Of a stretch of 64,000 nt of DNA, positions 61,861 through 64,000 are shown one piece after another. The stretch spans positions 7,068,001 to 7,132,000 of the forward strand of contig NC_135664.1 of the NCBI RefSeq assembly GCF_964188315.1, in the 5' to 3' direction. The position numbers were made by a program, and so were the translations under genes. Each line of letters begins with the position of its first letter. Positions within the stretch are counted from its first letter, which is position 1. The stretch is from Podarcis muralis. Its lineage: Eukaryota. The notes under the pieces were generated by a model. It was not told where the DNA came from, did no database searches, and was given only the letters and a program-made list of their open reading frames with translations.

Positions 61861-61905
61861 AACTCAAAACATTACAAAAAACAGGAAATGGAAGTTGTAG
61901 CTGCA

Positions 61906-62220
61906 ACCAGTAGCACCAGCTACATGGGGCTGAAGGGGCCCCCTCAATATTTTGAAGCAGGGGGTCTAGCTCCCCCAATATTGAGGGGGCCGGCAATCCC
62001 CACTGCTGCTGGGCGCCCTCCGTGAACCACAGCCCCTGCCCAGAATCCCACAAGGGGGCTGGGACAAGTGAGGGCGATCTTTGCCTCTGCTTCTCCCAGC
62101 CTCTGCCTGGCAGCCTGGGAGGGAGTTGGGACAAGTGAGGGTGAAGACTGCCCTCCGTGCGTCCGGCCCCCACCTGGCACATGCCAAGTGTGGAGCCCAG
62201 TGACTTCGCTTCTCCTCCTC
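61906..62220. mobile_element. Truncated GC-rich TE fragment between the integrase relic and the PSMA2 retrocopy
   Basis: Abrupt composition change. 14-bp inverted repeat (61938-61951 / 61977-61990) and a repeated GGGACAAGTGAGGG. No second end or TSD found. Confidence 0.45.
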
Positions 62221-62221
62221 T

Positions 62222-62831
62222 GGCTTGCGAGCTGTTGCCACAGGAGCCCCATCAGTTGGAATTGCTGCTTAAATGGCGTGGTACTGGCAACAGGGAAAAA
62301 GCAGAAATCCATTCTGTATGATGAATGAAGCGTATGCAAAGTGGAATCCAAAATCAAACACATAGGCTTGGTATATGGCTGCTGATTACTGAGTACTTGT
62401 CCACACAGCACGCAAACTGGCCCAGCAGTTCTACTTGGTTTATCATGAACCTATTCTAACAGCTCAGCCAGTGCAAGGGGTTGTTTCTGTAATGCAAGAA
62501 TACACACAATCTGGGGGTGTATGCCCATTTGGTGTATCATTCCTATTATGTGAGTGGAATGAGGGATGACCATATTTATTTCAGCCTAATCCATCTGGTG
62601 CTTATTTTGCATGGAAAGCAACTGCAATGGGAAGACAACCATGTGAATGGGAAGACATTCCCTGAAAAGAGGTACAGGAAGACTTGGAGCTTGAAGATGC
62701 TATTGACACTGAAGGAAAGCTTTGAAGGACAAATGACAGAAGATAACATAGAGGCTGGCATCTGTAATAAGGCAGGATTGAGAAGAATCACTCCAACTGA
62801 GGTTAAGGATTACCTGGCTGCAACTGCCTAG
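62222..62831 (+). pseudogene. PSMA2: Processed pseudogene of proteasome subunit alpha type-2, lacking the first ~25 codons
   Basis: Intronless and collinear with PSMA2: [97 protein letters not shown] at 62326 and 62567 where PSMA2 has Arg, plus several frameshifts and deletions. Probable 3'UTR continues to about 63730 (ATTAAA and a short A-run). Confidence 0.93.
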
Positions 62832-62843
62832 TATGCATTAAGG

Positions 62844-63520
62844 CAGTGTTTCCCAACCTTTTTTGGGCAAAGGCACACTTGTTTGATGAAAAAAATCTCG
62901 AGGCACATCACCATTACAGCCCCGTGACGTCAGCGCGCAGCGTCACGCCGGGAGGGAAGGGCGTCGGGGCGCTGCTGCTGCCGCCGCCGCTCCCGGCAGG
63001 CATGGGCCCAGCTGAGGCGGCGGCGGCTGTTGTGGTGGTGGCGGCGATAGCGGGCGGAGGAGGGGGCGGCGGGGCCGAGGTGGCCGGCGGCGGCGGGGGA
63101 GGCGGCGGCGGGTGGAGCAGGAGGGCGGCCGAGGCCGGTGAGGGAGTAGGGTTGCCCGGGGCTTGAGGAGCCGTCGCCGGGAGTTGCTGCTGCTGTTGTT
63201 GCTGCTGCTGCCCGGACATGCCGGCCTCCTCCTCGTCCGCTGTCTCGCGCTCCTCCCTTTTGCGCGCGCTGCCCCGCCGCCGCCCCATTGGCCGGGTCCT
63301 GTCAGCTGATCCTGTGTTATTTCCTGTGTGTGTGTGTGAGGGGAGAATGGAGAGAGAAACCTCGGCACCACCACCGCGGAGCCGCCCCCGGCTCGATGCG
63401 GATCCTCGCCGCCGCCGCCCCGCCTCTCGCCGCCCGACTCGCCCGCCTCCCTCCCACGGCACACCAGGCAACGTCTCGCGGCACACTAGTGTGCCGCGGA
63501 ACACCGGTTGGGAAACACTG
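62844..63520. mobile_element. Non-autonomous hAT element (677 bp) with a GC-rich, gene-like insert
   Basis: Perfect 15-bp TIRs CAGTGTTTCCCAACC / GGTTGGGAAACACTG. Perfect 8-bp TSD CATTAAGG (62836-62843 and 63521-63528). Confidence 0.92.
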
Positions 63521-64000
63521 CATTAAGGAAGACTGCTTCGATATATACAAGGATCTTTTAAAAATATTTGGCTTCTGCAATCTCATTTCTACTTTATCTG
63601 CTAGATATTTTTTTTAAAGAAATATTATGGATTCAAATACTACTGTCCTAATATTGAAAATGTGGAATTATTGTTCTTTAAAATATTAAACACTGTACAA
63701 GAATACACAATATGATTTTTTTAAAAAAAAACCAAACAAATTCAAATGGCACCTTCACCTTTCTCATGCGTGCAAGAAAATATTACTTTAATGAAAACCA
63801 ATTCTAACACAACATATATAGAATATCTGCCATGTAAGCGGTTGGTATTACTGTTGAGTCACTCTCAGGAGGAAGTTTGAAGTGATACACCATATTTTCC
63901 TCCATCCTGCAAGGAACAGTACTAGAGAGAGGTGAAGCAGAAGCAGGCAAGGTGAGAATGAAAGCTCTTGTCCTTGGGAGTGGATGAGGAAACAGCATGA

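What the first reader, a model, noticed from the sequence alone, without database searches (positions are those of the whole stretch)
62844..63520. Intact hAT element carrying an apparent captured host promoter and first coding exon (Pack-TE-like transduplication)
Seen: perfect 15-bp TIRs, a perfect 8-bp TSD (CATTAAGG), and ordinary hAT subterminal sequence at both ends enclosing about 500 bp of CpG-rich DNA. On the minus strand the insert reads like a gene 5' end: GC boxes, a CCAAT (63287-63291), a purine-rich leader, then gccggcATG at 63219. That ATG opens MSG(Q)9LPATAPQAPGNPTPSPASAALLLH(P)9ATSA(P)7AIAATTTTAAAASAGPMPAGSGGGSSSAPTPFPPG, 101 codons that end in transposon-derived sequence. An in-frame upstream ATG lies at 63288. 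Known: gene-fragment capture by non-autonomous DNA transposons is well documented in plants (Pack-MULEs, Pack-CACTA) and reported far less in amniotes. Inference: this is a captured N-terminal poly-Q/poly-P exon of a regulatory gene. I could not identify the donor.
Basis: partly seen in the sequence, partly recalled or inferred. Interest (0 to 1): 0.85.

Follow-up and report, generated by a model that had tools for sequence, protein, structure and literature searches.

The report
Lizard hAT transposon carrying RANBP9 start
This is a recently inserted 677-bp cut-and-paste (hAT) transposon whose middle is a copied piece of the start of the host gene RANBP9; it is one copy of a family that appears to number in the thousands, far more than has been reported for gene-carrying DNA transposons in vertebrates.

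Summary
The element has perfect 15-bp inverted ends, a perfect 8-bp target duplication, and about 494 bp of CpG-rich filling.

The minus-strand ORF is the RANBP9 N-terminus, codons 1 to about 90. It is colinear with RANBP9 exon 1 of another squamate, whose product matches human RANBP9 (E 1e-41). It is 27/29 identical to a Podarcis muralis protein that runs on into the conserved pre-SPRY sequence.

This is not a one-off capture. Filling sequence lies at about 3,000 or more times flank depth in two related lizard species. At least nine P. muralis database "proteins" are RANBP9 exon-1 pieces, and four of them are fused to the transposon end with different flanks.

Contigs from two other species show the precise empty site, and CpGs are undecayed, so the insertion is young.

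The 232 bp upstream of the ATG could not be shown to be the RANBP9 promoter. There is no evidence that the 101-codon ORF or the filling has any function.

The scan has already reported this same family on other DNA of this genome (13 notes). No paper on it was found.

The parts
62836..62843 (.). Left copy of the 8-bp target-site duplication CATTAAGG
   Evidence: The empty-site contigs keep a single copy (joint 62833->63519, 10 shared letters).
62844..62858 (+). Left terminal inverted repeat, 15 bp, CAGTGTTTCCCAACC
   Evidence: With the following T it matches 15 of 16 positions of the Anolis hAT-N3_AC TIR listed in PMC3014272.
62844..62957 (+). Transposon-derived left arm (114 bp), shared with the filling-free members of the family. 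It holds one GGCACAC subterminal motif (62872), a degenerate one (62902-62908), and a small hairpin with a CRE-like TGACGTCA (62925-62932).
   Evidence: loose ends: 15-33 contigs per DNA run match up to 62957 and then continue with AT-rich family sequence (CGCACGAAAGTGTAAG...). Summed depth is 10^4 times the flank. At 62908 nearly all copies read C where this copy reads T (table 3).
62946..62957 (-). Junction overlap: about 12 nt that fit both the transposon arm and the RANBP9 coding sequence (TCCCTCnCGGC). Read as microhomology at the seam (inferred).
   Evidence: Family homology runs up to 62957. Homology to RANBP9 exon 1 of L002 runs down to 62946.
62958..63219 (-). RANBP9 coding fragment: ATG at 63219, then codons 1 to about 88 (homology to codon 91). 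Contains MSG, poly-Q, LLLH, poly-P ... SSSAPTPFP.
   Evidence: P0002 and the P. muralis protein P0003, 27/29 identical in the overlap. (P0002 against 7nsc_A, Ran-binding protein 9, E 1.1e-41). (blastn against L002, 74% over 303 nt, E 1.7e-52).
62914..63219 (-). 101-codon ORF plus stop. The last 10-13 codons (VTLRADVTGL) are read from the transposon arm.
63220..63451 (-). 232 bp upstream of the ATG: a CpG-rich leader with CCAAT (63287-63291) and an in-frame ATG (63288). Probably the RANBP9 5' UTR or promoter, but the origin is not verified.
   Evidence: It is contiguous with the ATG without a seam. CpG observed/expected is 1.02. A 191-nt contig in an RNA-labelled run covers 63216-63405 with 1 mismatch (record 11). 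It does not align to the distant squamate locus L002 beyond 8 nt upstream of the ATG.
63280..63360 (.). About 81-bp segment missing from a minority of family copies
   Evidence: joints 63279->63361 and neighbours, seen in X1, X4 and X5. About 2% of depth in X4.
63403..63451 (.). Outer 49 bp of the filling. It is shared with a roughly 3-4 times more abundant sub-family whose interior differs.
   Evidence: loose ends 'before 63403' in 23-44 contigs per DNA run. Depth steps from 0.37 to 1.32 million in X4. P. muralis proteins P0043, P0051, P0056 and P0063 begin with this segment's translation (GGERRGGGGEDP) joined directly to EKELKRRL.
63452..63520 (+). Transposon-derived right arm (69 bp) with three GGCACAC motifs (63458, 63480, and 63489 on the minus strand)
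   Evidence: loose ends 'before 63452' (AT-rich family interior)..
63506..63520 (-). Right terminal inverted repeat. It translates as GWETL.
63521..63528 (.). Right copy of the target-site duplication CATTAAGG

Best explanation
The element at 62844-63520 is a non-autonomous hAT transposon. It consists of a 114-bp left arm, a 69-bp right arm and 494 bp of filling.

The filling is a copy of the 5' end of the host gene RANBP9: its first roughly 88-91 codons plus 232 bp of upstream leader, oriented on the minus strand.

The capture did not happen at this locus. An ancestral element acquired the RANBP9 5' region at least through the end of exon 1. The likely route is template switching during double-strand-gap repair or replication at a transposon copy (inferred, as proposed for Pack-TIRs in PMC8277862). 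The loaded element was then mobilised in trans by a hAT transposase. It spread to roughly 10^3 or more sites and diversified into deletion derivatives. This 677-bp form is one of them, with a seam at a roughly 12-nt microhomology.

This copy landed recently in non-coding DNA. It most likely does nothing, and its 101-codon ORF is a by-product.

Shown here: the transposon anatomy, the RANBP9 identity of the coding part, the multi-copy status, the empty site in other lizards, and the absence of a transposase.

Inferred: the capture mechanism, mobilisation in trans, RANBP9 origin of the leader, and neutrality.
For: Transposon anatomy: (TIRs, TSD). One search gives a 15/16 TIR match to Anolis hAT-N3_AC; the TSD CATTAAGG fits 5 of the 6 specified positions of the NYYTARRN target motif listed there for related families (hAT-N3_AC itself is listed as NYYYRRRN, also 5 of 6). 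One search finds no Pfam transposase in any ORF. One search finds four GGCACAC subterminal motifs in 183 bp of arms, against 10 in the whole 64 kb.

Donor identity:
- The peptide hits P0002 (E 3.5e-15) and the P. muralis protein P0003.
- P0002 matches PDB 7nsc_A, Ran-binding protein 9, at E 1.1e-41, including the LLLH-poly-P block. It matches RANBP10 only over the later 50 residues.
- blastn of the element against the squamate RANBP9 locus L002 gives 74% over 303 nt, E 1.7e-52, starting 8 nt before the shared ATG.

Family:
- In organisms B and C the non-repetitive leader bins 63269-63382 have summed word depth of 308,000-557,000, against 47-98 in the single-copy flank.
- Between 6,000 and 16,000 distinct contigs were laid per DNA run.
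- Organisms B and C hold 0.71-0.75 of the element's words.
- Nine P. muralis UniRef mini-proteins carry RANBP9 exon-1 pieces. Four of them end ...HYKG-WETL followed by D, T, I or V. WETL is the translated TIR, so these are four different insertion sites.

Recency:
- A precise empty-site joint 62833->63519 appears in X4 (2 contigs), X5 and X15.
- Only one majority difference from the family was listed inside the element, at 62908, among the differences shown; 36 further listed differences were not shown.
- CpG observed/expected is 0.89-1.0 inside against 0.22 outside.

Decay in sister copies: replacements at residues identical from squamate to human (P->L twice, Y->H, G->D), plus frameshifted and deleted forms.
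Against: The RANBP9 locus of this genome itself was never seen. The window is the only genomic DNA available, and P0003 has no contig on record. The exact breakpoints and the RANBP9 origin of the 232-bp leader are therefore unproven. A scan note (s1-175884) suggests a second CpG-island piece may be stitched in.

The tool states that summed contig depth is not a calibrated copy number.

The flank exists in two versions, 4-9% different from the window, in the runs laid. The empty-site contigs may therefore be orthologous or paralogous. The X15 contig of organism A is probably the paralogue.

The hint that the insertion segregates within the species rests on one sampled word.

BLASTP with composition correction scores the peptide against P0002 only at E 0.009, because the sequence is low-complexity.
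Confidence: 0.88

Rival explanations
1. Single local transduplication: the gene fragment was copied into a transposon sitting at this locus (gap-filling without transposition). This is how most animal Pack-TIRs arise, and it is what the first reader implicitly assumed.
For: In PMC8277862, 98.6% of animal Pack-TIRs are single-copy, and most fit transposition-independent gap filling.
Against: Filling sequence lies at about 3,000 or more times flank depth in two other species. Four P. muralis proteins show an exon-1/TIR junction with four different flanks. The empty site lacks the whole element, not just the filling.
Confidence: 0.02
2. The GC-rich interior is intrinsic low-complexity transposon sequence, and the resemblance to a gene start is chance.
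For: The interior is highly repeated. Open frames occur on both strands. Composition-corrected BLASTP is weak. PDB phmmer with the peptide alone found nothing relevant.
Against: The DNA is colinear with RANBP9 exon 1 of another squamate, starting at the shared ATG context, at E 1.7e-52. Sister copies continue into the invariant [37 protein letters not shown]...HYKG sequence of RANBP9. Canonical family members have an AT-rich interior instead (loose ends).
Confidence: 0.02
3. The copy, or the family, has been put to use. The CpG island would act as a dispersed promoter or first exon producing chimeric transcripts or a 101-aa poly-Q/poly-P peptide, or antisense/small RNAs would act on RANBP9. 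This can be true in addition to the best explanation.
For: CpGs are undecayed. A CCAAT box and a good ATG context are present. A contig in an RNA-labelled run covers 63216-63405. PMC8277862 reports that many Pack-TIRs are transcribed as chimeras.
Against: Undecayed CpG is equally explained by youth. With thousands of copies, RNA contigs are expected from intronic read-through. Sister copies carry replacements at invariant residues, frameshifts and deletions. The insertion is absent from related species, so it cannot be a conserved function. The ORF ends in transposon sequence.
Confidence: 0.07
4. Assembly chimera, or the reverse direction of transfer (the RANBP9 N-terminus derived from the transposon).
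For: None specific. GC-rich repeats are prone to misassembly.
Against: A perfect TSD and a precise empty site in independent runs. Independent runs hold 0.66-0.86 of the element's words. The poly-Q/LLLH-poly-P N-terminus is present in human RANBP9 and in gecko and tuatara fragments, which is far older than this young family.
Confidence: 0.01

Closest known systems
Pack-TIRs of animals (Tan et al. 2021, Nat Commun 12:4280, PMC8277862), especially the multicopy Pack-hAT-N8_XT of Xenopus tropicalis that carries 291 bp of the CAPSL 5' UTR
   Same: A non-autonomous hAT with intact TIRs and TSDs. Its interior is a GC-rich 5' piece of a host gene, it has been moved to several loci with distinct TSDs, and no function is shown.
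   Different: That survey of 100 animal genomes found 370 Pack-TIRs, only four of them multicopy (three in frog, one in alligator). The example given for the frog has three copies. Here depth suggests thousands of loaded copies, shared by several lizard species and probably still young or segregating. No occurrence of 'lizard' or 'Anolis' in that paper's main text.
Pack-MULEs / Pack-CACTA of plants
   Same: Gene-fragment capture between transposon ends, a preference for GC-rich 5' gene ends, amplification after capture, chimeric ORFs, and families of deletion or rearranged derivatives. The plant properties are recalled from established literature; the GC preference is also stated in PMC8277862.
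   Different: A different superfamily (hAT: 8-bp TSD and short TIRs, against Mutator or CACTA). A vertebrate host. One donor gene dominates a very large family, rather than many donors at low copy number.
Anolis carolinensis non-autonomous hAT families hAT-N3_AC and SPIN-like (Novick et al. 2011, PMC3014272)
   Same: TIR CAGTGGTTCCCAACCT against CAGTGTTTCCCAACCT here (15/16). 8-bp TSD with a TA-centred palindromic preference (NYYTARRN is listed for the SPIN-like families, NYYYRRRN for hAT-N3_AC). Length 600-800 bp. Hundreds to thousands of copies.
   Different: The Anolis families are described without host-gene filling. Sequence relatedness beyond the TIR was not tested here.

Membership tests
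hAT superfamily (non-autonomous member) | 8-bp target-site duplication | tested here: met
   CATTAAGG on both sides. A single copy remains at the empty site.
hAT superfamily (non-autonomous member) | Short terminal inverted repeats beginning CAG/TAG, similar to described hAT families | tested here: met
   A perfect 15-bp TIR. 15/16 identical to the hAT-N3_AC TIR in PMC3014272.
hAT superfamily (non-autonomous member) | Target-site preference of the Charlie/SPIN-like group (NYYTARRN) | tested here: inconclusive
   CATTAAGG fits 5 of the 6 specified positions (position 2 is A, not Y). One site cannot establish a preference.
hAT superfamily (non-autonomous member) | An autonomous partner encoding a hAT transposase with the same ends exists in the genome | not testable with these tools
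   Only this 64-kb window is available. No other TIR match in it. No transposase domain in the element's ORFs, as expected for a non-autonomous copy.
Pack-TIR (gene-fragment-carrying TIR transposon) | Interior derived from a host gene rather than from the transposon | tested here: met
   The RANBP9 N-terminal coding sequence. Canonical family members have a different, AT-rich interior (loose ends at 62957 and 63452).
Pack-TIR (gene-fragment-carrying TIR transposon) | Parental locus identified in the same genome, without TIRs, with homology running past the captured piece | not testable with these tools
   No genome-wide search is available. P0003 is not on record as a contig. The parent is known only by homology to RANBP9 of other species and to longer sister copies.
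Pack-TIR (gene-fragment-carrying TIR transposon) | For the multicopy class: the same loaded unit at several loci with different TSDs | tested here: met
   Depth about 3,000 or more times the flank for filling bins. Four P. muralis proteins with the exon-1/TIR junction followed by different flank residues. Absence at this site in other lizards. Actual TSDs of other copies were not seen.
RANBP9 as donor (rather than its paralogue RANBP10) | N-terminal MSG, poly-Q, ...LLLH-poly-P extension preceding the ALNEQEKEL...HYKG segment | tested here: met
   P0002 aligns to human RANBP9 residues 62-193, including LLLHPPPPPP (145.6 bits). It aligns to RANBP10 only over residues 100-150 (82 bits). The window peptide is colinear with P0002.

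The most novel reading that the evidence does not exclude
Wall lizards carry the most strongly amplified gene-fragment-carrying DNA transposon yet seen in a vertebrate. It would be a hAT family still mobile in living populations, which has scattered thousands of unmethylated copies of the RANBP9 CpG-island leader and poly-Q/poly-P start codon region through the genome. There, some copies would act as ready-made promoters or first exons for neighbouring genes, or feed small-RNA regulation of RANBP9.
Probability: 0.25. Interest if true: 0.8.

Novelty: new member of a known kind. Interest (0 to 1): 0.5.

Why it matters
Gene-fragment capture by DNA transposons is a major source of exon shuffling in plants, but is held to be rare and almost always single-copy in animals. 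The survey in PMC8277862 found four multicopy cases among 370 Pack-TIRs in 100 genomes.

A hAT family that carries a host CpG-island 5' end to thousands of sites in an amniote, with insertions young enough to be absent in sister species, would be a natural system for three questions:
- how capture happens;
- whether dispersed CpG islands create new promoters or exons;
- how the host silences such copies.

There is also a practical point. These copies already contaminate protein databases as Podarcis 'uncharacterized protein' or 'RANBP10' entries, and they will mislead annotation of RANBP9 paralogues.

This particular copy is probably inert.

Tried and rejected
- PDB phmmer with the 101-aa peptide: only a spurious ABC-transporter hit at E 1.2. 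Low complexity defeats it.
- Exhaustive representative search: a single hit, P0001. Its contig L001 shares only the first 161 nt and then runs into a different CpG-island-like sequence with no TIR. It was not usable as a donor.
- Look-up of the P. muralis protein P0003: no contig on record.
- Third protein search, with the 196-aa ORF that includes the leader's translation: nothing new. The leader's origin stays open.
- MAFFT and blastn of the leader against the upstream 1.5 kb of the squamate RANBP9 locus L002: no alignment beyond 8 nt before the ATG.
- Alternative plus-strand reading (ATG 63002 ... GGTGAG 63137, which looks like a signal-peptide exon): rejected. It is the antisense of the RANBP9 coding sequence.
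- A 62-base junction query for sequencing runs: too short for the index. The 90-base query had only 4 sampled words.
- Pfam on all element ORFs and on P0002, P0004 and P0005: no domain.
- Literature searches for RANBP9 with hAT, transposon, lizard, Podarcis or Lacertidae: no paper links them.

Full report
OBSERVATION

CAGTGTTTCCCAACC lies at 62844-62858. Its exact reverse complement lies at 63506-63520. These are the only two matches in the 64-kb window even at two mismatches; chance expectation is 0.1. The element is flanked by CATTAAGG on both sides.

The interior has 68-78% GC against 25-43% outside. It also shows no CpG depletion: observed/expected is 0.89 in the filling and about 1.0 in the arms, against 0.21-0.23 in the flanks.

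On the minus strand, the CCAAT at 63287-63291, the ATG at 63219, the in-frame ATG at 63288 and the 101-codon frame ending at the TAA 62914-62916 are all present. The open frame alone means little. Five other frames or strands of the same DNA are open for 102-196 codons.

WHERE TRANSPOSON ENDS AND FILLING BEGINS

I laid the contigs of four public runs on 62300-64000. Dozens of contigs per DNA run follow the window from the left end up to 62957 and then continue with AT-rich sequence. Dozens more come out of AT-rich sequence and join the window at 63452.

The transposon-derived arms are therefore 62844-62957 and 63452-63520, and the filling is 62958-63451 (494 bp).

The arms hold four GGCACAC motifs out of only ten in the whole window. 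A fifth at 62902-62908 is spoiled by a T where nearly all other family copies read C (table 3). I read these as subterminal transposase-binding repeats. That is an inference from how hAT elements are generally built.

No ORF of the element has a Pfam domain, so the element is non-autonomous.

The TIR plus the following base matches 15 of 16 positions of the TIR of Anolis hAT-N3_AC. The TSD fits 5 of the 6 specified positions of the NYYTARRN target motif listed for related families, in PMC3014272.

THE DONOR

A note from this scan suggested RANBP9 for similar elements elsewhere in this genome. I treated that as a lead and tested it.

- The 101-aa peptide found three proteins. P0002 is 153 aa and comes from a Logan contig of another squamate (E 3.5e-15). 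P0001 is described below. P0003 is UniRef A0A670IX10 of Podarcis muralis.
- P0002 starts MSGQQPQQLPATTP...ASAALLLH-poly-P, colinear with the window peptide. It runs on into [53 protein letters not shown].
- Against solved structures, P0002 hits 7nsc_A, 'Ran-binding protein 9', at E 1.1e-41. The alignment includes the LLLH-poly-P block. RANBP10 matches only over the later 50 residues.
- At the DNA level, the element aligns to the RANBP9 exon 1 of that contig (L002) at 74% over 303 nt, E 1.7e-52. The alignment runs from 8 nt upstream of the shared GGCCGGCATG down to 62946.
- P0003 is identical to the window peptide at 27 of 29 overlapping residues and also continues into the ALNEQ... sequence.

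The coding part of the filling is therefore the RANBP9 N-terminus, codons 1 to about 88-91. Exon 1 ends at ...VHYKG, about codon 143 by P0002.

About 12 nt (62946-62957) fit both the transposon arm and the RANBP9 sequence. I read this as seam microhomology (inferred).

A FAMILY, NOT A LOCAL EVENT

In organisms B and C (runs X4, X5) the single-copy flank has word depth of 47-98. The non-repetitive leader bins 63269-63382 sum to 308,000-557,000, and the arms reach 1-2.9 million. The tool warns that summed depth is not a calibrated copy number. I take it only as 'about 10^3 or more loaded copies among about 10^4 family members'.

Between 6,000 and 16,000 different contigs were laid per DNA run. 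Organisms B and C hold 0.71-0.75 of the element's sampled words. They could not reach that share without the filling.

A profile search returned at least nine small P. muralis UniRef 'proteins' made of RANBP9 exon-1 pieces.

- Four end ...VHYKG-WETL followed by D, T, I or V. GWETL is the translation of the TIR. These are four insertions in four different flanks, in a sub-family where the end of exon 1 abuts the TIR.
- Others continue past HYKG with a shared sequence, perhaps intron 1.
- Others join the outer filling segment (GGERRGGGGEDP, which is 63403-63440 here) directly to EKELKRRL.

The ancestor evidently held all of exon 1. The present 677-bp form is one of many deletion derivatives.

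One search shows two further variants. An approximately 81-bp deletion (63280-63360) is present in about 2% of depth. There is also a frequent breakpoint at 63403. Beyond it, a sub-family 3-4 times more abundant has a different interior.

Sister copies carry replacements at residues that are identical from squamate to human (P->L twice, Y->H, G->D), as well as frameshifts. That looks like neutral decay.

AGE AND PRESENCE/ABSENCE

Contigs that join 62833 directly to 63519, with ten shared letters (TG plus the TSD), occur in X4 (two contigs), X5 (one) and X15 (one). No contig in X4 enters the element from this flank.

Among the differences listed (36 further listed differences were not shown), only one position inside the element, 62908, differs from the family majority. 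CpGs are undecayed. The insertion is therefore young and is absent from two related species.

Two caveats apply. First, the flank itself exists in two versions that are 4-9% apart. The X15 contig, from organism A, carries the version farther from the window, so it is probably a paralogous rather than an allelic empty site. Second, a 90-base junction query had only four sampled words. Three organism-A runs held three of them, and all others, including organisms B-H, held two. That is a weak hint that the insertion segregates, and no more.

WHAT REMAINS OPEN

The 232 bp upstream of the ATG is contiguous with the coding part. It is covered from 63216 to 63405 by a 191-nt contig in an RNA-labelled run.

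I could not reach the RANBP9 locus of this species, and the leader does not align to the distant squamate locus.

Its outer 49 bp belongs to a more widespread sub-family. Scan note s1-175884 suggests a second promoter island is stitched in.

'Captured promoter' is therefore plausible but unproven. Part of that stretch may be 5' UTR, or foreign to RANBP9.

MECHANISM

Most likely (0.88): template switching during repair or replication at a hAT copy copied the RANBP9 5' region into the element. This is inferred, on the models discussed in PMC8277862. A hAT transposase supplied in trans then moved the loaded element, which amplified and shed internal pieces. This copy is a recent, probably neutral insertion in non-coding DNA. 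No ORF with family support lies nearby.

COMPARISON AND NOVELTY

The kind is known. PMC8277862 lists 370 animal Pack-TIRs, 208 of them hAT. Only four are multicopy, and the example given for the frog has three copies. That paper also notes that multicopy Pack-TIRs favour GC-rich pieces.

A loaded family at 10^3 or more copies in an amniote is far outside that range. No paper in the library links RANBP9 with lizard transposons.

The scan itself has already reported this family on other DNA of the same genome (13 notes). This window adds one more young copy and some family anatomy.

I rate it a new member of a known kind, interest 0.5.

Noticed in passing
window 62923-62947: The transposon's left arm carries a perfect CRE-like palindrome TGACGTCA (62925-62932) inside a small hairpin (CGTGACG ... 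CGTCACG). It lies in the part shared with the whole family, so on the order of 10^4 copies would spread potential CREB/ATF sites.
   Followed up: no
window 62391-63715 (flanks of the element): The flanking DNA occurs in two versions in organisms B and C, with two contigs of about equal depth. A version 5-9% different from the window is very deep (588-720) in an RNA-labelled run of organism A. The insertion site therefore lies in a low-copy duplicated segment whose other copy is transcribed.
   Followed up: partly
window 63520 -> 62843 (table 5c): Contigs in organisms B and C join the right transposon end back to the left end with only 6-7 letters (CCTAGA, ATATAGA) or 40 letters between. These could be neighbouring head-to-tail copies sharing a target site, or end-joined excised elements.
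   Followed up: no
L001:1-1751: A Logan contig (ERR14042001) in which the RANBP9 start (15 nt before the ATG to codon about 49, with a 15-nt poly-P deletion) runs into a different CpG-island-like sequence that has its own ATG and GTGAGT. There is no hAT TIR in the remaining 1.6 kb. It may be a larger composite element or an assembly join.
   Followed up: partly
UniRef entries of Podarcis muralis (P0003, P0005, P0009, P0017, P0043, P0051, P0053, P0056, P0063): At least nine short 'uncharacterized protein' or 'RANBP10' entries are gene models laid on transposon-borne RANBP9 exon-1 fragments. Several end in the translated TIR (GWETL). These are annotation artefacts.
   Followed up: partly
window 61900-62300: A second GC-rich patch (60-66% GC) sits 600 bp to the left. 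It begins with an inverted repeat (GGGGCCCCCTCAATATT ... AATATTGAGGGGGCC, about 61935-61992). It is probably another repeat element and is unrelated in sequence to the hAT element.
   Followed up: no
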